64,000 nt of DNA from Mytilus trossulus (lineage: Eukaryota), in contig NC_086375.1 in assembly GCF_036588685.1 (NCBI RefSeq), forward strand, positions 56,916,001 to 56,980,000, read 5' to 3'. The position numbers and the translations under genes are program-made. Below are positions 49,581 to 64,000 of this stretch, piece after piece (position 1 is the stretch's first letter; each line of letters opens with the position of its first letter). The notes below the pieces were generated by a model. That model saw only the letters and a program-made list of their open reading frames with translations. It did no database searches and was not told the origin of the DNA.

Positions 49581-50836
49581 CATTAACAACCATAAGAAGG
49601 CGACAGCAAAAGTGTTTAGTGATATAGGGACGAATTCAAATGACCGATTGTGCAAGGGCTGTATAGCCAGTCAAAGTTGTTAAAAAAAACTTCCATCATC
49701 ATCATTGAATTCAAATTACTTACCAGTTTAAACATTGTAAAAATACAAACAAATATTGATGCATAAAATGTGAACTTTTATGATTTTATTGACGAGATGT
49801 TGGTTTATTTTTTTAAATTCCTTTGTTTTAATGTTGAGATGTTCTTCCATTGTCAAGTGACATGTACTGCACAGTACACTAAATATTTGTGTATTTTGAT
49901 GGATACTTTTATTTTGGCTTATGAAATAAGCTCTTTATCTGTATACAGGTAGATATTTATAAAGTTTATAAGTGTGCATTACTTAATATTTATTTCTGTA
50001 AATTGCTACCAAGTAACAATTTGGAATTTGATGAATACATTGTATGTCAGAGCTAAAAGGAGGCTGGTGGAGAGAGCCTTTAATTATATTTTCTTTTTTC
50101 AAAAGTGTTATTTATTATTAGTTGCATCCAGGGCTTTCATTGCAAATATTGTAAACTATTATGTATACATATGTATATGCATGTTTATATGTTAAGTTGA
50201 TTTAAAAAAAAAAATGAAAAAGAGTTGTGGTGTTTTATTAATTTAGGCAATATAATTAGAAAAAATAAAGATTATATGATTATTGGTAAGGATTTGTGTC
50301 TTTCAATACTCATCTTCTTCTAAAGAGTAAGATTTTCAGTTTCTATGAGAAATTGATTACGTATTTTATATTGTTTTTAAAATGTTTTTTATCATGTTTC
50401 TATTTATTCATATGTTCTACACGGTGCAAACTCGTTATTTCTATATTTATGAAGAAATGTAGCAAAGAAATATTTGTAATACATTGTAACTGTAAATATC
50501 CTATCAAAGTACTTCAAAAGTTAATATTTTTACAAATGTATAAGAAAAAGTATGTATGTATACATGCATGCATATGTAAGGCAGCATTTCTGACATGTAA
50601 ATATATTAAACATGAGATCCCCTATACGCTTTTGACCAACCGTGGAAGTTCTGTATAGCCAGTCAAGGTCGTTAAAAACTTCCATTTGCATATGCTTAAT
50701 TTTATTTATATCTTATTTTGCTATATAACTATATAAAGATTGTTCTGTCTCACTTACTCAATAGTTTTAGTTCTGTTTTTTATCTTTATTTTTTAGATAT
50801 AATTAGTTATCAAAATTACCAGGATTATAATTTTAT

Positions 50837-50880
50837 ACGCCAGACGCGCGTTTCGTCTACATAAGACTCATCAGTGACGC
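50837..50880 (-). ncRNA. Minimal type I hammerhead ribozyme, intact core, within a retrozyme fragment (about 50805-50935)
   Basis: Reverse complement reads GCGUCA CUGAUGA GUCUuauguAGAC GAAA CGCGCG UC UGGCGU. Flanks match the 58724-59149 family. Confidence 0.85.
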
Positions 50881-51447
50881 TCAGATCAAAATAGTTAAAA
50901 AGCCAAATAAATACAAAGTTGAAGAGCATTGAGGATATAAAGTAGATGCTCTTTAAAATTTTCAAATATGATTATTGCTTGCTTCTGTAGTCTTGGTTTT
51001 ACAAAATCTTTGAATTTTAATCATCTTTTATCATTAATTATAATTTTGGGACAATACAAGCTGAGATGTTGACATATATTTTACATAGTATTTTGACAAT
51101 TCAAGATATTAGCCAATGATGATTTGATATGTGTTTTAAAGGATAGTCTTAATCCACAAGGGCAATAAATGATTTTTTTCGATATTTCCCATTTATAGAT
51201 ATGTGTCAAAATTAAACAGTTATTGATTTTTTTAAAGAATAAATATTAAAAAAAAATTGCAATTTTTAGATATTAAGATCTTCATGAACATTTCCAGTTG
51301 TAAGAAACCTTTTTGTTGGGACTATCACATACACATAACTATTCAATATTAATTTCCCACAGGCTTTATCTTGATTTTCAAATACTTCAATTTCTATGAT
51401 ATATATGGCCCATTGTATGCCTTTCAAACATATTTAGGTTGGTTTAT

Positions 51448-55254: not shown

Positions 55255-55552
55255 GCAGCACAGTAGGCATCACTTCGTTTGTTGACATGAATATCAATTA
55301 ATTTATATGGTTGTTTTTTTATAAATTTCCTGTTTATAAAAAGAATGAATTTTTCGAAATACCAATACTACAAGACATATATTTCCTTAGCCATATTTGG
55401 CACAACATTTTGAAATTTTTAGTCCTCAATGCTCTTCAACTTTGTACTTGTTTGGCTTTTACAACTATTTTGATCTGAATGGGTCTGATGAGTCTCATGT
55501 AGACAAACCGCGCGTCTGGCGTATTATAAGCCTGGTACCTTTGATAACTATT
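55255..55552 (+). mobile_element. Degenerate retrozyme copy with a mutated hammerhead
   Basis: Body similar to 58860-59140. CTGATGA at 55485-55491 is retained, but GAAA has become AAAC (55505-55508) and the 5' strand of stem I is lost. Confidence 0.75.
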
Positions 55553-55559
55553 ATGCTCA

Positions 55560-56102
55560 TATTTTTTAAGATCCTTTCCGGTTTTACAAGTTTGTGGCTT
55601 GCTGCAGCGTTGACCTTCTTGTTGTTGATCTTATACAGTATTGATCGTCGTTCGTTTTTCCTTCTATCCCCTTACGGTGTTCACTTTAGTTGTTCAAACA
55701 ATAAGTAACGGATGATCTGTTACTGTACCGGTTTGTTCCGTATCTGGCCGATCTCCTTTTTATTGTACCATTTCTAGCTTGTGTTTATCTTTTAGACGTA
55801 TGGATTACATAGAAAGCTGACATATTCGATTGCTTGTCTAACGAGTTAAATGTACAGTAGGCATTTTCTTTGATATCACTGTAAGAGATATTGAGGTTTC
55901 TTTTGAGAAATCCGATGGTTTTATTTGCCTCGGCACAGATCATACGGTTTTTGATATGGTTTTCCAATTTAAGGTCTGGTGTTTTGCAGTTGTTACGTGC
56001 TTCAAAGTGTGACTATGTAAACGATAATCCTTTATAATAGGTGTTCTGTTCTTTGCTACTGATAGTATCTGACATTTATCTGTATGGAATTTCATCATCC
56101 AT
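55560..56102 (-). pseudogene. Decayed CR1/L2-type LINE ORF2 3' fragment
   Basis: WMMKFHTDKCQILSV..Y.LH.H.L; ICAEANKTIGFLKRNLNI; HKLEMVQ..RRSARY; frameshifted. Confidence 0.75.
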
Positions 56103-57119
56103 TTTTCATGGTGTTATCTGCAATTGCCTCATAGTCGATTTAATATTTTCATGCTTATCGTTTATATAGAAGAGCAAGAAAACAATACATCCTGGAATAT
56201 CAAAGTCTGTTGATTGAAAAAATAAATGATTAAGAGTTATACAATTTCGTATATATGTCAAGAAATGATCATAAAATCAGTTATAACCGTTTTACCCTTT
56301 TCTTATACGTTGTTGATATAGACCTAAAAAATTATCATAGTTTGTTTATAGTAATATTCTTTTTTTGCTTTTACATCCGACATTCACCCAAACATGGATG
56401 TAACGTTATCTATGTTTAGAAACAGATGCGAGATTGTGGCCGTCTTAAACTTGCGGAGATACGTGTGCCTTTGCTTTGCATTGAAAATATCGTTATGTTG
56501 TGACTTCGTGCAGGGTCGGTGAAGAACAACAAAGGCAGCGATGTTCCTATATTTTTTTTTTTAAATGCTTATTTTGGAATTCTTTGCGACCAGTTGATAT
56601 GCCATTGATCCATTATTTACCATTATGAATTTTTGATAAGTATCGTTGTTTCTCAAGAGGTCGATATATCGTAATATTATCTTCCAAGAACATTGAAATC
56701 TGATATCTTTATTCACTGTATTTGGGATTTGAGCTGTTTTGTAACACATCGTGACCAAAAAACCCTAATATGGAGAATAAAGATATTGTTGTTCATTGAC
56801 TATTTAACTTGAGATTTAGCAATTATATTATAGTTCTTGTTCATATAACTTATTGTTTGCATTGTATTGACTTTTCTTATAAATTCTGGAAATTTCACAA
56901 AGAAATTTAACAAAACAGTTGGTATCATTTGTTTTTGGTAACTGAAATTGATTTCAGAAATGATGTTTCGGAATGTCAAATAATACACTAATGCCAGTCG
57001 GCACTAAGTTTCTTATATCTGTAGTACTACTTATCTCCTGATACTATACTTTCACATGCAGACAAGACTGTGAAATAGATAAGTCACACTACACATACAT
57101 TTAAATAGATCGTTATACA

Positions 57120-60100
57120 ATGAATGGAATAGTAAAATTATCATTATTTGTCTTTTTTCAAATTTACTTTTTTTACAGGTAAGAACGTTTACTCAATAGT
57201 ATTTCTTCAGACCAAAGATACTTTTAAACGTTCACTGTAAATACTTCACAATTAAACATACAAGTAAAATATGAGGAAGACCAGATATTTCTATGACACA
57301 TGTGTAGTCTCAGAATAGATGCACATGAAACACTACGCAAATTAACTAAATTAAGAATGTCTTTAGCAGTCCAGATTAATTTTCAATAACTACGTAAAAC
57401 AATAAAAGAAAAACAAAGAATAGTTGAAATTTTGACCAAAATACAAACTCCCGTTCATTTATCATGTTTAATCATTTACCATGCAGGGTTCATTCAATAT
57501 AGACTATTGTTTGTTCACTGAATGTCGTTCACCTTTCCATTTTCTGTAACTTTAATAATTAGAAACTGTTTATTTCGGGCAATTGTGAGCGTAGTACCAT
57601 GTAGCTCATGGGTGTAGCTACTTGAAAATAAATTGTAAGCAGGGTGATTTTGTAAAATTATCTAAAATTAATTAGCGAGTGAAGGAAGAGGTGATGTGCA
57701 TGTAAACAAGTCAGGGAATTTGCATATCTAGGTAACTAGCGTTAAAATTTTTAAAAAAGAGGGTGGATTTGTCCAACTACAGGGTGTGGAGCCACTATTG
57801 GTGGGGTATTCATTTTGGATGGTAGACTTGTCCAAGTATATGGTATGATGTGACTATTAGAGTCCTCATTTGAGGGAAGCATTGTCAAACTAAAGGGTGT
57901 GACGCCACTGTTGGCGTCTATTCTCCACTTTCGACTAAAGAATAGTCCAATAATAAGGTATGGCGTCACTATTGGCGTCCGATGTCATATTTTGAATGTA
58001 GAATGGTTCGAAATAAGGTAAATCGTCACTATTGGTGTCCGGTATCCACTTTCGAGGGTAGAATGGTAAAATAAAAAGGTATGGCGTTCGCGTCCTGTGT
58101 CCAGCTTCATGGGGGTCCCTTCGATCAAATATAACTAATTTCTATTTGGAAATAAACATAGTATTTGAATTACGATTAAGCAATAAAAATCATTATATCC
58201 TGTGGATAGTTTGAAACACGCTTATCCTGTATAACAACTTAACAAGTAGTATTTGGTTGGGAGCAAACAGCTTAGGGCAGTCGGATAGGCGAAACTACTG
58301 ATTATCCGTATTATTTATAATCATTTTTATTTTAAAATTTTACATTCGTTTTATTCTATTAGTATTCTGTAACTGTCCCAGCGGATGGTCAAGATACGAA
58401 CAATCATGTTACCACGTCAGTAGAGATTCAGCATCGTGGGCAGAAGCCATGGTAAGTATGATCACCACGAGCGGTATTGCATACTCAATCATTAGAAAAG
58501 TTAACAAAACAATAGAATAAATAAAGTTATACCTTCCAAGGAAAATATACATATATTATATATACAATGTATAGTGGCCGTTTCAACTAGATGCTTAGCA
58601 CATGCCTACTACAAAATAAGGACAAACGTAATCATTAGTGTGGTGGTATCAATTATTCTGCGATCATATGATTTTAAAATATGCAGAAGTATTTCTGCTG
58701 AAATATATATTGTTTTAGTATTTATGAGTCTTTTGTAGACGAAACGCGCGTCTGGCGTATATACAAAATTTAGTCCTGGTATCTATGATGAGTTTAGTTA
58801 CTACCACTGGGTAAATGCCACTGCTGGTGGAGACTTATTTCCTCGAGGGTATCACCAGCCCAGTAGTCAGACATGAATTATCACTGATTTGGTTATATTT
58901 ATAAATTTACTGTTCACAAAATTTAGAATTTTTTAAATACTAAGGCTTTTCTACCTCAGGCATATATTTACCTTAGCTATATTTGGCAAAACTTTTGGGA
59001 ACTTTGGTCCTCAATGCTCTTTATTTACGTTCTTTATTTGGCCTTTATAACTATTTTGGATTCGAGCGTCACTGATGAGTCTTTTGTAGACGAAACGCGC
59101 GTCTGGCGTATATGCAGAATTTAGTCCTGGTATCTATGATGATTTTATTTGTTATCGTTTAGAAAATGTGTGAAATACACGGGAGTTTCCTTGCAAGCAT
59201 TGAAACTGTTGCTGAAGACCAGTACATGAAAACCCTACTTGGAGCTCAACGTCATAGTAAGTACATAATAAGAACATGGAGATCTGATGAGTTAAGCAAA
59301 TTCCAACTGGTTTGTTCTTATTTTGTCCTGTAACGCAACTGAATGAATGACTCGATTTGTCGATTCTGAAGAAATTTTATTACACTTGTTAACTGAATGA
59401 ATAACTCGAATTGTCAATTTTCATAAATTATTTCAGTCAAGTATTAACTAAAAAGTTTGTCATCGTAGCTGAATTCAGTGGTCCATATCTGGATTGCATT
59501 GTGAAAGTATTATCAACCGATAGATGTAGTTCACCTTGTTTTAAAATACTTTCAGCTTCAAGCTTTTGGTTAGGTGGATCAGATTGGGACAACGAAGGAG
59601 AATGGAAATGGGAACCACATGCAATTCAAATGAATTTCACTAACTGGCACAAAGGACAACCAGACAATAGTGGAGGCAAAGAGCATTGTTTATCTGTACA
59701 CAGATCCTACCGTTACGAGTTTGTCGATAACAACTGTCACGATTCACAACACTATTTGTGTGAAAAAACGTACGTACTTGTGCATATAGCAACTGATTAT
59801 CCAAAATGTAAGGAGCTATCATTTTATTTTAGTTTAAATTCAGATACTAGTATGTAGGACTCTAAAGTGTAACGGGGACGCTAAAGTACGATATTCACGT
59901 CAAAGTGCGATGGTCTGCGTTAATTAAAGTGCGATGCCTCCATACGCGGAAGTCCGATGTTTGCGAAAGTATAGACGTACTTAACGTTGGATTATGACGT
60001 TAACAGTCGTTTATACAAACCAATAAGATTTAATCAAAAGCAAAATACTTTTGTAAAGTTTACAGAAATAACCAATAAATTCATTAAAATTGTATAATGA

Positions 60101-61253
60101 CTTTATAAGGACAATGACACATCAGCTACAAAGAAACAACACTTGATTAGAACCTCAAAAGAAACATTCATACCAAGTTTGGTTTCATTCCATTAAGCGG
60201 TTTTCTAGAAGAAGACTTTTGTATATATTTCCAATAGGGTCCTTTGTTAAACTAAGTCTCTCGTCGGTAGTCATCTTGGTTGATTGATTTGCTTCAAAGT
60301 AACAACACTTGGTTGGCATCTCATAATGAACATTCATGTCATGTTTGGTTTCATTCCATTCAGTGGTTCTTCAAAAGAAGACTTTTGTATGTATATCACA
60401 TATGGTCCTTTGTTAAACTAAGTTTCCCGCTGGCAACCATCTTGGATGATTGATTGGCGACAAAGAAACAACACTTGGTCAGCACCTCATAAGGATAATT
60501 CATGCCATGTTTGGTTTCATTCCATTAAGTGGTTCTCTAGAAGAAGACTTTTGTACCATCGTACTTGGGTTTAGACAATCGTACTTTAGAGTGAACCATT
60601 GCACTTTAGCGTGAGACACCGTGGTACTTTAGCTTAAATCATCGCACTTTAGCGAGATCATCGCACTATAGAGTACCATCGCACTTATATATATATATAT
60701 ATCTACTTTCACATTTATCTCAATGAAAATATTACACAGGATAAAATAAAACGCAGGTGGAAGCTATTTGATAATTAAGTGTAAGCTTAACGCCCAACGG
60801 CATATGTTTCAAGCACATCTAGTACAAGATAAAAAAAAAAAAAACAACGAAAAAAACATTCACACTATTGTTAAATCATCCCAATTGTCTCATCTTATTA
60901 GAATGTGTTCCAAATTTTGAAATAATCTGAATTATTTTGGTTTGCTGACGTCAGTGACCCCCTGCTTAAAATTGAACTCGACTCGATTTAACTCTAAAAA
61001 GATGATTTTCGTGTCCTAGAAATAGTTTTAAAATGAGCTCATCATTTGCCAAGTTTTGCTAACAAAATTATAATGTTTACAAGAGAAAACATTTATTAAG
61101 ATACATTTGTAAGCATCACGTCTAGCAAAGAAGGAGGTCCATTAAAATAACACCCCCAAACCATTTCAAAAACAATATCATATGTATGTTTCATTTTTTT
61201 ATTATTATTTTAGGGACACCAGTAGCACAGAAACAGAGGTTCTTGGAAAATGA
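57120..61253 (+). CDS. Secreted perlucin-like C-type lectin, 5 exons, about 164 aa; exon 1 appears frameshifted by one extra T (null allele or homopolymer error)
   Basis: Exons 57120-57178 (signal-peptide-like MNGIVKLSLFVFFQIYFF), 58363-58451 (CPSGWSRYEQSCYHVS..SWAEAM), 59163-59256 (MCEIHGSFLASIETVAED), 59556-59769 (FWLGGSD..EGEWKW..NWHKGQPDN..EHC..C..YLCEK), 61214-61253 (DTSSTETEVLGK*). AATAAA at 61385-61390. Confidence 0.88.
58724..59149 (+). mobile_element. Non-LTR retrozyme: 351-nt unit bounded by direct repeats carrying type I hammerhead motifs
   Basis: Direct repeat ATGAGTCTTTTGTAGACGAAACGCGCGTCTGGCGTATAT..AATTTAGTCCTGGTATCTATGATGA at 58724 and 59075. Equivalent GUC sites at 58752 and 59103 are 351 nt apart. 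Confidence 0.85.
59066..59109 (+). ncRNA. Minimal type I hammerhead ribozyme, intact core
   Basis: Stem I GCGUCA/UGGCGU; CUGAUGA 59072-59078; stem II GUCU-uuugu-AGAC; GAAA 59092-59095; palindromic stem III ACGCGCGU; GUC cleavage triplet 59101-59103. Confidence 0.88.
59860..60686. mobile_element. Element with multiple inverted AAAGTGCGAT subterminal repeats enclosing about 2.5 tandem units of about 166 bp; lectin intron 4
   Basis: AAAGTGCGATG repeats on the left and CATCGCACTT repeats on the right; AACAACACTTG at about 60136, 60301 and 60468; followed by (TA)n. Confidence 0.7.
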
Positions 61254-61504: not shown

Positions 61505-62064
61505 AGACGGCTACAGTGCAGGCGATTTGGTGTTACGATATCTCAGTAGCATGGATTCGAATCCCGGGGAGGGAAGCAAATTAACAGATCTAACATTGTT
61601 GGGTTAATGTTTAGACAAGTTGTATATACATAATGTACACAGACATGTATTACCATCACTGCTGGTGATCCGATGGATAAATCTGTTGTAGAGTTGTCAC
61701 TGGCACAGACGTACTATTTTCTATGACTGTATCTTACATTAATTTGTAGGATCCTTTACTATAGATAATTTAGCTGATCTGTAAAAATAACATCTTCATG
61801 CCTTATATATCATGTACTGTAGTACGACGCTAGATTAATACTTGACGCATTTTTTTTGTTCTTCCCTCGCCGGGATTCGAACCCATGCTACTGAGATATC
61901 GTGACACCAAATCGCCTGCACTTTATCCGGTGCGTTAGACCATACGACCACCTGGGCTTCACAATAATAAAGCTTTCGGTGGCCGGGTGTTACCTTTCCT
62001 CGTCAGTTTAAATCTGGGCTTCACAATAATAAAGCTACGGTGACCGTGTGTTACCTTTCCTCGT
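61505..62064. mobile_element. Inverted composite of a tRNA-headed repeat with a hammerhead-like motif, inserted in (TA)n
   Basis: + copy 61505-61847 (B-box-like GATTCGAATCC) faces a - copy 62017-61846 (A-box TGGTCGTATGG, B-box GGTTCGAATCC). Partial tandem repeat 62013-62064. TA runs on both sides. Confidence 0.7.
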
Positions 62065-62535: not shown

Positions 62536-63218
62536 AGATAAAAGACATGCACAATACCTTCGCTATTAACACATTGCATCAGATAAAAGATTCCTTTTGT
62601 TTTGTTTTTTTAATCCTTATATGAGATCATTTGCCACGAATTTGTACGCCATATTATCCATATATTTCAGTTTGAAATAATAACTGGTATCGACGTTTCT
62701 TAAGTAGCCGCAATATCGTAATATAGTATTTCAAATCAACGACTATATCTTTATCCACCGTATTTAGGATTTTTTGTCACGAGTTGATTTATAATATATC
62801 GTGACAAAAAATCCCAAAATATGGTGCATTAAGATAATGAAGTTCTTGGACTACATACCATGAGATACAGTTAGTTTAATCTTGTTCTTCTATATATTTC
62901 CAAATGTGTGAATACTATTTACTTTTCTTATAAATATCGGAGGTCCAAAAGAGGCCAGATTTGACATAATCATTTGGTTTCTCTTGTTTTTTTATAAACT
63001 GAAATCGTTTAAGAAAATGCCTCTGAATGCCAAGTAATATACTATTGTCAGTCATTGGACTATTTGAACAGCGGTATACTACTATTGCCTTTATTGGCTC
63101 TAGGTTTCTTATATCTGCAGTCCTTATCTCCTGATGCTATATTTACACATGCAGATAAGACTGTTTAATGGAATAAGTCACATTTCATACATGTACACGT
63201 ATAATAGATCGCTGTACA

Positions 63219-63276
63219 ATGAATGGAATAGTTAAATTATCATTATTTGTCTTCTTTCAAATTTACTTTTTTACAG
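63219..63276 (+). CDS. Exon 1 (signal peptide) of a tandem paralogous C-type lectin; rest of gene outside the window
   Basis: ATG...TACTTTTTTACAG|gtaag nearly identical to 57120-57178; 58 nt, phase 1. Upstream region and intron 1 are also homologous to the first copy. Confidence 0.8.
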
Positions 63277-64000
63277 GTAAGAATGTTTGCTCAATAATGT
63301 TTCTTCACACGAAGGATTCTTTTAAACCGCTCACTGTAACACTTAAGCATTTTATGTATAAGTATAATAGGAGGAAGATCGGAGACATCTTTTATACACT
63401 TATTGTCTCAAAAAAGACAAACATGAAACGCTATTGAAACTTAGACTTGAAGATATCTCGGATAATTTATTTTCAATAACTACATAGAGCAATGAACTCA
63501 GTGAAAAGCTAGAAACCCGGTTTACAAATTAACAGAAATTTGACCTTAACCCCCAATCTCAAACATTTATCATGTTTTTGGTTGTTGCTATTCAGGTCTT
63601 ATTCGATCACTATGATATGTGAATAATAGTTACTTGTAAGTTGACTGAATTGCTATGCAGCTTTTTCGTTTTCTGTAACTAATTCAGAGTTATGTTAATC
63701 GTGAATGTAATAAAAAAAAAAACAATCAAAGGTAACGGATGTACAGATCATATTCTGCTTGGACGAATATCATTGTGTCGCTTTCGATTATTTACCCACT
63801 TGTTAAACGAGGTTTCATCTGCCCGATCAGGTTTAGTTTTGCGCAAAATTTCAAAACTAAGAAACTACTTACCTTTTTTATATAGAAGAACCAACTGGTG
63901 TCAGTTGAAGAAGACCCACATTGAAATGAGATAATTTTGCATTATTTTCACTCATTTAAATGACTTTGATTGACAGGCAATATCTAAGAGCTGAGTACTA

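What the first reader, a model, noticed from the sequence alone, without database searches (positions are those of the whole stretch)
58724..59162. Sense-oriented hammerhead retrozyme in lectin intron 2, abutting the 3' splice site
Seen: a 351-nt unit between two hammerhead motifs on the transcribed strand. The downstream motif has a complete core. The upstream one lacks CUG and the 5' stem I strand but keeps ACGCGCGUC-UGGCGU. The repeat ends only about 13 nt before the acceptor AG (59161-59162). Established: minimal type I hammerheads with palindromic stem III mark Penelope-associated elements and retrozymes and often cleave as dimers; retrozyme circRNAs of roughly this size are reported in Mytilus (from memory), so the family itself is probably not new. 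Inference: the two ACGCGCGU palindromes can form an 8-bp stem III, letting the intact core cut at 58752 as well as at 59103. The pre-mRNA could therefore self-cleave, possibly release a 351-nt monomer, and compete with splicing. The branch point may be supplied by the retrozyme.
Basis: partly seen in the sequence, partly recalled or inferred. Interest (0 to 1): 0.8.

Follow-up and report, generated by a model that had tools for sequence, protein, structure and literature searches.

The report
Mussel hammerhead retrozyme copy in lectin intron
A 427-base, front-truncated copy of the already published mussel "retrozyme" (a non-coding jumping element carrying a self-cutting hammerhead RNA) lies in sense inside intron 2 of an expressed C-type lectin gene, 10 bases before the splice acceptor. 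The gene's mRNA is still seen correctly spliced, so this is an ordinary insertion in an unusually tight spot.

Summary
59066-59109 (+) is a complete type I hammerhead (Rfam RF00163, 32.5 bits against a cut-off of 34). 58724-58752 is a remnant lacking CUG and the 5' strand of stem I. The spacing is 351 nt.

The element (58724-59150) belongs to a family with more than 5,000 first-look matches in this 1.3-Gb mussel-type genome. Its ribozyme matches, letter for letter, that of the published Mytilus galloprovincialis clone Mg353 (PMC7229834), which self-cleaves slowly in vitro.

Family insertions share a fixed 3' end about 45 nt after the cleavage site and have variable 5' ends. This is the Penelope-type pattern, so the "upstream half-ribozyme" is simply a 5' truncation.

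RNA contigs from two studies show the lectin gene expressed and spliced at AG 59161-62. A tandem paralog lacks the insertion.

Cleavage, release of a 351-nt monomer and competition with splicing remain untested. No locus-specific retrozyme RNA was seen, and only contigs were available. With 12 host bases left before exon 3, the branch point probably lies in the retrozyme tail (inference).

The kind is already known. The scan holds 18 notes matching hammerhead/retrozyme/ribozyme/intron in this genome, several of them sense-oriented intronic copies. Interest is low.

The parts
58724..59150 (+). Whole retrozyme insertion: 427 nt, 1.18 units, 36.5% G+C, no meaningful ORF
   Evidence: Homology to other family copies begins at 58724 (92 of 137 BLAST alignments) and ends at 59150 (84 of 137). 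Phase 334 to 45 on a 362-nt reference unit. G+C. Stop-free stretches.
58724..58752 (+). 5'-truncated hammerhead remnant: AUGA, stem II, GAAA, helix III and cleavage-site C58752, without CUG or the stem I 5' strand
   Evidence: RF00163 model positions 10-39, 17.2 bits. Sequence.
58753..59103 (+). One 351-nt unit between the two cleavage sites. It is shorter than the usual 362-368 nt because about 14 nt (a hairpin) are missing at about 58870/58871.
   Evidence: Unit lengths and gap columns. The deletion junction is unique in the genome at up to 2 mismatches.
59066..59109 (+). Complete type I hammerhead ribozyme. Predicted cleavage between C59103 and U59104.
   Evidence: RF00163 positions 1-45, 32.5 bits, E=3.7e-6. 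The stretch GAGCGTCA...TGGCGTAT reads the same as in the published self-cleaving clone Mg353, compared by eye.
59104..59150 (+). 47-nt 3' tail of the element, ending in the family's fixed terminus ...GATGA(G/T)TTTATTT. Candidate new branch points A59139, A59142 and A59147, plus the upstream part of the pyrimidine tract.
   Evidence: 3' ends lie at phase 43-55 in about 22 of 26 loci of the first sample and at 43-54 in 17 of 20 of the second. Flanks. Branch-point candidates were read from the sequence (inference).
59151..59162 (+). Remaining host intron sequence, GTTATCGTTTAG, with acceptor AG at 59161-59162
   Evidence: Aligns to the insertion-free paralog. The splice junction is given by RNA contigs.
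58452..59162 (+). Intron 2 of the C-type lectin gene: 711 nt with the insertion, about 284 nt without it
   Evidence: RNA contig pieces 58361-58450 and 59162-59256 in X19 and X20. GT at 58452-53 and AG at 59161-62.
57074..57179 (+). Exon 1 (5' UTR, ATG at 57121, signal-peptide-like MNGIVKLSLFVFFQIYFF...)
   Evidence: X19 contig piece 57074-57173. Sequence and GT donor at 57180.
58361..58451 (+). Exon 2 (…CPSGWSRYEQSCYHVSRDSASWAEAM), start of the lectin domain
59163..59256 (+). Exon 3 (KMCEIHGSFLASIETVAEDQYMKTLLGAQRH)
59556..59769 (+). Exon 4, the main part of the C-type lectin domain (QPD motif). Its 3' end is approximate.
   Evidence: Pfam PF00059, E=3.1e-8, 34.7 bits. RNA contig pieces 59556-59767/8. 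Sequence.

Best explanation
This is one ordinary copy of the known Mytilus non-LTR retrozyme (the 'HHR A', ~350-390-bp family).

Origin. A reverse transcriptase of the Penelope-like type most likely started at the element's fixed 3' terminus, 45-47 nt downstream of the ribozyme cleavage site. It copied once around a circular or multimeric RNA template and stopped 76 nt into the second pass, inside CUG|AUGAG. The result is a full unit preceded by a truncated one. The cDNA went into the pyrimidine tract of intron 2 of a C-type lectin gene after that gene had duplicated.

Present state. The element is transcribed passively, in sense, as part of the lectin pre-mRNA. Its one complete hammerhead has the same sequence as a ribozyme shown to self-cleave slowly in vitro (about 0.1 per min). 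Some pre-mRNA or excised lariat molecules are therefore probably cut after C59103. The acceptor is only 59 nt further on, and introns cut by a slow hammerhead are known to splice anyway. Splicing therefore prevails, and normal mRNA is made.

The branch point and the upstream part of the pyrimidine tract are now probably supplied by the retrozyme's U-rich 3' tail.

Shown: identity, architecture, family behaviour, gene structure, expression and the correct splice junction.
Inferred: the mode of integration, cleavage in vivo, branch-point use and the lack of effect on the gene.
For: Family:
- 5,252 first-look candidates in the window's own genome. The best other copies are 84-90% identical, with units of 362-368 nt and arrays of up to at least 6 units.
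- The published clone 'Rtz Genom mussel Mg353' is plainly the same repeat, and its hammerhead reads identically.
- The literature reports about 5,000 hammerheads in 350-390-bp repeats in M. galloprovincialis, abundant circRNAs and kobs of about 0.1 per min.

Insertion mode:
- The 3' end lies at phase 43-55 in about 22 of 26 loci and at 43-54 in 17 of 20 loci chosen by their last 121 nt only.
- The 5' ends are spread over the whole unit, and most copies are shorter than one unit.
- 5' truncation and partial tandems are the stated hallmarks of Penelope-like insertions. cDNAs longer than one unit are predicted for a circular template.

Empty site: the tandem paralog (L032) aligns on both sides of the insertion and has nothing between them.

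Expression and splicing:
- X20 record 15 has 0 mismatches over 380 nt. X19 record 9 joins 58450/1 to 59162/3 and 59256 to 59556.
- DNA contigs of X1 carry both junctions with 0 mismatches.

A slow hammerhead in an intron does not prevent splicing (Dye 2006 and Fong 2009, as described in PMC2995048).
Against: - No read-level data were available. All runs were contigs, so cleavage ends, circles, lariats and expression levels cannot be seen.
- The spliced mRNA cannot be assigned to an insertion-bearing allele. X20 RNA and X1 DNA are different samples.
- No clean target-site duplication was found. Only an ambiguous TATTT occurs on both sides.
- No autonomous Penelope-like partner sharing the 3' end was identified.
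- The Rfam score is 1.5 bits below the curated cut-off.
Confidence: 0.75

Rival explanations
1. The pre-mRNA is cut efficiently at both 58752 (by the downstream core acting through an 8-bp intermolecular-type helix III) and 59103. This releases a 351-nt monomer that is circularised, and it measurably lowers lectin mRNA by competing with splicing.
For: The pairing scheme is sterically correct for half of a double hammerhead (sequence). Forcing it costs about the same predicted free energy as forcing the single hammerhead (-88.7 against -89.5 kcal/mol; the unconstrained minimum is -98.4). Retrozymes lack promoters and are thought to depend on read-through transcription. Dimeric Mg353 constructs release monomers that RtcB circularises.
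Against: Correctly spliced mRNA is present in two RNA studies. No RNA contig at 92% likeness or more is specific to this copy; those overlapping the element have 4-6 mismatches in about 75 nt and run on into other flanks. The mussel ribozyme is slow, and slow intronic hammerheads do not block splicing. In the published dimer both ribozymes were complete, whereas here one is truncated.
Confidence: 0.1
2. The insertion allele is splicing-defective or null. The spliced mRNA seen comes only from insertion-free alleles of a presence/absence-polymorphic site.
For: The insertion moves the ancestral branch-point region (CTGAAAT at about 58694-58700; CTAAAT in the paralog) more than 440 nt from the acceptor (inference). 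RNA and DNA evidence come from different samples. DNA run X5 held only 0.69 of the sampled words, a share that an empty allele would roughly give.
Against: The X20 mRNA contig is identical over 380 nt to the insertion-bearing haplotype. The tail offers several yUnAy-like sites 16-24 nt before exon 3 and an AG-free stretch at 59125-59160. No empty-site joint appeared among the joints listed, though 666 joints were not shown.
Confidence: 0.1
3. It is not a retrozyme but a fragment (pseudo-LTR) of an autonomous Penelope-like element.
For: Penelope-like elements carry hammerheads in pseudo-LTRs and form partial tandems. 5 of 30 GIY-YIG loci have retrozyme-like pieces within 1.5 kb.
Against: The same 362-nt unit forms long non-coding tandem arrays. 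It matches the published retrozyme clone. No reverse transcriptase or endonuclease ORF adjoins it here. Orientation relative to GIY-YIG is inconsistent in the five loci.
Confidence: 0.03

Closest known systems
Mytilus galloprovincialis non-LTR retrozyme, HHR A family, clone Mg353 (Cervera & de la Pena 2020, PMC7229834)
   Same: Same repeat sequence and an identical hammerhead. Unit about 350-390 bp, low G+C, non-coding, thousands of copies and tandem arrangement.
   Different: This copy is a 1.18-unit, 5'-truncated solo insertion inside a gene. It is 7% diverged from the family majority and has a private ~14-nt deletion. No circRNA from this copy was shown.
Penelope-like element insertions: partial tandems or pseudo-LTRs with hammerheads, frequent 5' truncation (PMC8557442)
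   Same: Fixed 3' end, variable 5' end, and a truncated copy preceding a full one.
   Different: No RT or GIY-YIG ORF, and the unit is only about 360 nt. The ribozyme has a 2-bp helix III with a tetraloop rather than the minimal Penelope-type helix III.
Natural intronic self-cleaving ribozymes of host genes: CPEB3 HDV-like ribozyme (PMC10919898) and amniote intronic hammerheads (de la Pena & Garcia-Robles 2010, cited in PMC7229834)
   Same: A self-cleaving motif in sense inside an intron upstream of an exon, so cleavage and splicing could compete kinetically.
   Different: Those are single-copy and conserved at orthologous positions over long times. This one is a repeat copy absent from the neighbouring paralog, and nothing indicates selection for it.
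Engineered hammerheads in introns (Dye et al. 2006 and Fong et al. 2009, as summarised in PMC2995048)
   Same: A hammerhead inside an RNA polymerase II intron. A slow ribozyme leaves splicing intact, which fits the spliced mRNA seen here.
   Different: Those were mammalian reporter genes with the ribozyme placed mid-intron. Here it lies 59 nt from the acceptor, and the element replaces the branch-point region.
Double (dimeric) hammerheads of newt satellite 2 and axolotl retrozymes (PMC7229834)
   Same: The palindromic helix III sequence allows two copies to form a long shared helix III.
   Different: Amphibian ribozymes need the dimer, whereas invertebrate ones are reported as active alone. 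Here one partner lacks part of its core, so only one of the two composite sites could be active.

Membership tests
Hammerhead ribozyme type I (Rfam RF00163) | Conserved core CUGAUGA ... GAAA ... UH with the cleavage site 3' of H | tested here: met
   59072-59078 CUGAUGA, 59092-59095 GAAA, 59102-59103 UC. The upstream copy lacks CUG, so the feature is not met there.
Hammerhead ribozyme type I (Rfam RF00163) | Three helices, with I open and II and III closed | tested here: met
   Stem I is 6 bp (59066-71 with 59104-09), stem II is 3 bp plus a 7-nt loop, and stem III is 2 bp plus a GCGC loop (cmscan alignment; structure evaluated at -4.4 kcal/mol).
Hammerhead ribozyme type I (Rfam RF00163) | Score at or above Rfam's gathering cut-off (34 bits) | tested here: not met
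   32.5 bits, E=3.7e-6 on 701 nt; blank at gathering threshold. The shortfall is 1.5 bits, and the sequence equals an experimentally active ribozyme.
Hammerhead ribozyme type I (Rfam RF00163) | Self-cleavage | not testable with these tools
   Known only by identity with the ribozyme of clone Mg353, kobs about 0.1 per min.
Metazoan non-LTR retrozyme (Mytilus family) | Sequence homology to the published repeat | tested here: met
   The Mg353 sequence in the paper's supplement was compared by eye with 58871-59150 and 58753-58870. 84-90% identity to other copies in the window's own genome.
Metazoan non-LTR retrozyme (Mytilus family) | Non-coding unit of ~350-390 bp with one type I hammerhead, in tandem, with low G+C | tested here: met
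   351-nt unit, 1.18 units, 36.5% G+C. Arrays elsewhere. No ORF of note.
Metazoan non-LTR retrozyme (Mytilus family) | Expressed as circular RNA | tested here: inconclusive
   RNA contigs of the family are present in X19 and X20, but none is specific to this copy, and contigs cannot show circles.
Metazoan non-LTR retrozyme (Mytilus family) | Target-site duplication | tested here: inconclusive
   Only TATTT is shared by the 5' flank and the element's own 3' end.
Penelope-type (target-primed) insertion | Fixed 3' end, variable 5' truncation, partial tandem | tested here: met
   Definition from PMC8557442.
Penelope-type (target-primed) insertion | An autonomous partner sharing the 3' end | tested here: inconclusive
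   149 GIY-YIG matches in the genome. 5 of the 30 loci read hold retrozyme-like pieces, in inconsistent orientation.
Host-adopted intronic ribozyme (CPEB3 / amniote HH9-HH10 type) | Conserved at the orthologous or paralogous position | tested here: not met
   Absent from the tandem paralog's intron 2. Orthologs in other species could not be examined.

The most novel reading that the evidence does not exclude
The retrozyme tail has been taken over as the working branch point and pyrimidine tract of lectin intron 2. The intact hammerhead, helped by the half-ribozyme upstream, cuts a meaningful share of the pre-mRNA or lariat. If so, this immune-type lectin gene is tuned by a race between ribozyme and splicing, and its promoter feeds the retrozyme circRNA pool.
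Probability: 0.07. Interest if true: 0.55.

Novelty: already known. Interest (0 to 1): 0.2.

Why it matters
It matters little as a discovery. The element family, its ribozyme, its circRNAs and its presumed dependence on read-through transcription are all published, and intronic sense copies seem common in this genome.

The locus is a convenient natural test case for two things:
- how close to an acceptor a self-cleaving element can sit without abolishing splicing;
- whether a truncated hammerhead can be served in trans by its intact neighbour.

The family-level pattern seen here (3' end fixed about 45 nt past the cleavage site, 5' ends anywhere, lengths from 0.4 to several units) supports 3'-anchored reverse transcription of retrozyme RNA.

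Tried and rejected
1. Selection for an AG-free zone. The downstream tail reads GATGATTTT where 43 of 45 tails in the first sample read GATGAGT, which removes an AG 19 nt before the acceptor. However, 4 of 17 tails in the second sample also carry T. It is a family variant, so the idea was dropped.
2. A 5'-end hot spot inside CUGAUGAG. 7 of 26 loci end there. Those loci were chosen for covering a query that starts there, and copy length falls off steeply, so this is a selection artefact.
3. A '351-nt subfamily'. The deletion junction is unique in the genome. Mg353 has a similar but not identical loss of the same hairpin.
4. Dating the insertion from the 4 differences in 76 nt between the two arms. 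This is unreliable, because a multimeric template could have differed from the start.
5. Folding energies. The catalytic fold is never the minimum-energy fold, and the single and double forms cost about the same, so the result does not discriminate.
6. A search for a Penelope-like partner through GIY-YIG loci was inconclusive and not pursued.
7. An empty allele in DNA runs.
8. Raw reads. None were offered and all 24 runs are contigs, so molecule ends at 58753 and 59104 could not be examined.
9. The exons were searched one by one.
Twenty short stretches were fetched instead.
Full report
**What is there**

- At 59066-59109 on the + strand there is a complete type I hammerhead. It has a 6-bp stem I (GCGUCA / UGGCGU), CUGAUGA, a 3-bp stem II with a 7-nt loop, GAAA, a 2-bp helix III closed by GCGC, and the cleavage site after C59103.
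- Rfam's Hammerhead_1 model matches it from end to end at 32.5 bits (E=3.7e-6 on the 701 nt searched). That is 1.5 bits under the curated cut-off, which is why the whole-window scan at gathering threshold returned nothing.
- At 58724-58752 the same sequence recurs from AUGAG onward (model positions 10-39, 17.2 bits). It lacks CUG and the 5' strand of stem I.
- The two copies are 351 nt apart. The repeated arms, 58724-58799 and 59075-59150, differ at 4 of 76 positions.
- The 15-mer core with up to 2 mismatches occurs four times in the window, against none expected by chance.
- The window contains no N.

**What family it belongs to**

- The 420-nt query gave 5,252 first-look candidates in the window's own genome (1.30 Gb, 541 contigs). 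The scored copies are 81-90% identical. Units are mostly 362-368 nt, and arrays reach at least six units.
- Cervera and de la Pena (2020, PMC7229834) describe this for Mytilus galloprovincialis. They report about 5,000 type I hammerheads in 350-390-bp repeats and circRNAs at up to about 1% of total RNA. A cloned genomic repeat self-cleaved at about 0.1 per min, and RtcB circularised the monomer.
- Their supplement prints the clone 'Rtz Genom mussel Mg353'. It is visibly the same repeat as 58753-59150. Its ribozyme, from GAGCGTCA to TGGCGTAT, reads the same as the window's, compared by eye.
- So the family, the ribozyme and its activity in vitro are already known. Their text classes invertebrate retrozyme hammerheads (2-bp helix III with a tetraloop) as active as single motifs. 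This contrasts with amphibian ones and with the minimal Penelope-type ones.

**How the copy got its shape**

I mapped the ends of family copies on a 362-nt reference unit numbered from the cleavage site.
- In the 26 or so independent loci of the first sample, the 3' end falls at phase 43-55 in about 22. The 5' ends lie anywhere.
- The flanks beyond ...GATGAGTTTATTT(A) are unrelated to one another.
- A second sample of 20 loci, chosen only by the last 121 nt, gave the same result. 17 end at phase 43-54. The other 3 reach the end of the fetched stretch still within family sequence.
- In that second sample the 5' ends are scattered and lengths are mostly 138-293 nt, less than one unit.
- A fixed 3' end, 5' truncation and partial tandems are the stated hallmarks of Penelope-like insertions (PMC8557442). 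The published retrozyme model predicts cDNAs longer than one unit from a circular template (PMC7761336).

The window's copy runs from phase 334 to phase 45, one unit and 76 nt later. The 'upstream half-ribozyme' is simply where copying stopped.

The copy differs from the family majority at 25 of 351 aligned positions and lacks about 14 nt of a hairpin near 58870. That junction is unique in the genome.

**The host gene**

The exons were searched one by one.
- Exon 4 matches Pfam Lectin_C (E=3.1e-8, above the cut-off).
- RNA contig X19 record 9 (574 nt) lies in four pieces: 57074-57173, 58361-58450, 59162-59256 and 59556-59767.
- X20 record 15 (380 nt, poly(A) library) lies on the last three of these with no mismatch.
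- With GT at 58452-53 and AG at 59161-62, the exons are about 57074-57179, 58361-58451, 59163-59256 and 59556 to about 59769.
- Exon 1 holds ATG 57121 and a hydrophobic leader.

The element therefore lies in intron 2, in sense.

**The insertion site**

- A tandem paralog begins just past the window's end (L032; exons 89% identical). Its intron 2 aligns with the window up to about 58723 and again from 59149, with nothing between. This gives an empty-site comparison.
- Only GTTATCGTTTAG (59151-59162) remains of the host intron before exon 3.
- The likely ancestral branch region (CTGAAAT in the window, CTAAAT in the paralog) now lies more than 440 nt upstream.
- The retrozyme tail offers A59139, A59142 and A59147 in yUnAy-like contexts. 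No AG occurs between 59125 and 59160.
- That the tail now supplies the branch point is a sound inference, not a demonstration.
- DNA contigs of run X1 reach 25 nt into the element from both sides without a mismatch, so that sample carries the insertion.

**What could not be shown**

- All 24 runs offered were contigs. Molecule ends, circles, lariats and expression levels were therefore out of reach.
- RNA contigs that overlap the element have 4-6 mismatches in about 75 nt and continue into other flanks. They come from other copies.
- No contig shows retention of intron 2.
- The spliced mRNA cannot be tied to an insertion-bearing allele.

**Most likely mechanism**

- The element is a passenger, transcribed with the pre-mRNA.
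- Its intact ribozyme probably cuts some molecules after C59103.
- At about 0.1 per min it is slow compared with the seconds needed to transcribe the 59 nt to exon 3.
- Introns cut by a slow hammerhead are known to splice normally (Dye 2006 and Fong 2009, as summarised in PMC2995048).
The downstream core would pair through ACGCGCGU and GCGUCA with the upstream site. Predicted folding makes it no more costly than the single form. Nothing yet supports it in vivo.

**Verdict**

This is a real feature, correctly described and of a known kind, one of thousands of copies. The scan holds 18 notes matching hammerhead/retrozyme/ribozyme/intron in this genome. Among the eight listed, several describe sense-oriented intronic copies, and one follow-up reached the same classification. 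Its position, 10 nt from a working acceptor, is a curiosity that could serve as a natural experiment, not a new system.

Noticed in passing
window 50790-50935 (- strand): A short 5'-truncated copy of a related repeat with an intact hammerhead whose loop 2 differs (CTGATGAGTCTTATGTAGACGAAACGCGCGTC). It is probably the published 'HHR B' family.
   Followed up: partly
window 55391-55560 (+ strand): A degenerate copy of the second hammerhead repeat, about 1.5 kb upstream of lectin exon 1. Its core is mutated (GACAAACCGCGCGTC instead of GACGAAACGCGCGTC), so it is presumably inactive. Contig depth there is very high in DNA and RNA runs.
   Followed up: partly
window 63177-63434 and L032 1530-2741 (past the window's end): A tandem paralog of the lectin gene with the same signal-peptide exon (MNGIVKLSLFVFFQIYFFTG) and exons 2-3 at about 89% identity. 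Its intron 2 is 1,050 nt and has no retrozyme.
   Followed up: partly
window 60125-60715: A very high-copy repeat downstream of lectin exon 4 (contig depth 1e4-1e5). It contains about three tandem units that each hold a similar stop-free stretch (…WFHSIKRFSRRRLLY…). Its identity is unknown.
   Followed up: no
window 59769-59771 onward: The X19 mRNA contig continues 63 nt past exon 4 without matching the next 1.3 kb. The gene probably has a further exon beyond 61100, or a diverged 3' end.
   Followed up: no
L034-L063 (own genome): 149 GIY-YIG matches with open frames up to 1,056-1,060 aa, which suggests many apparently intact Penelope-like elements. 5 of the 30 loci read hold retrozyme-like fragments within 1.5 kb, more than the roughly 0.5 expected from copy density.
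   Followed up: partly
window 61505-62064: Another first-stage note on this window proposes a second ribozyme retroelement fused to a tRNA-derived head. It was not examined here.
   Followed up: no
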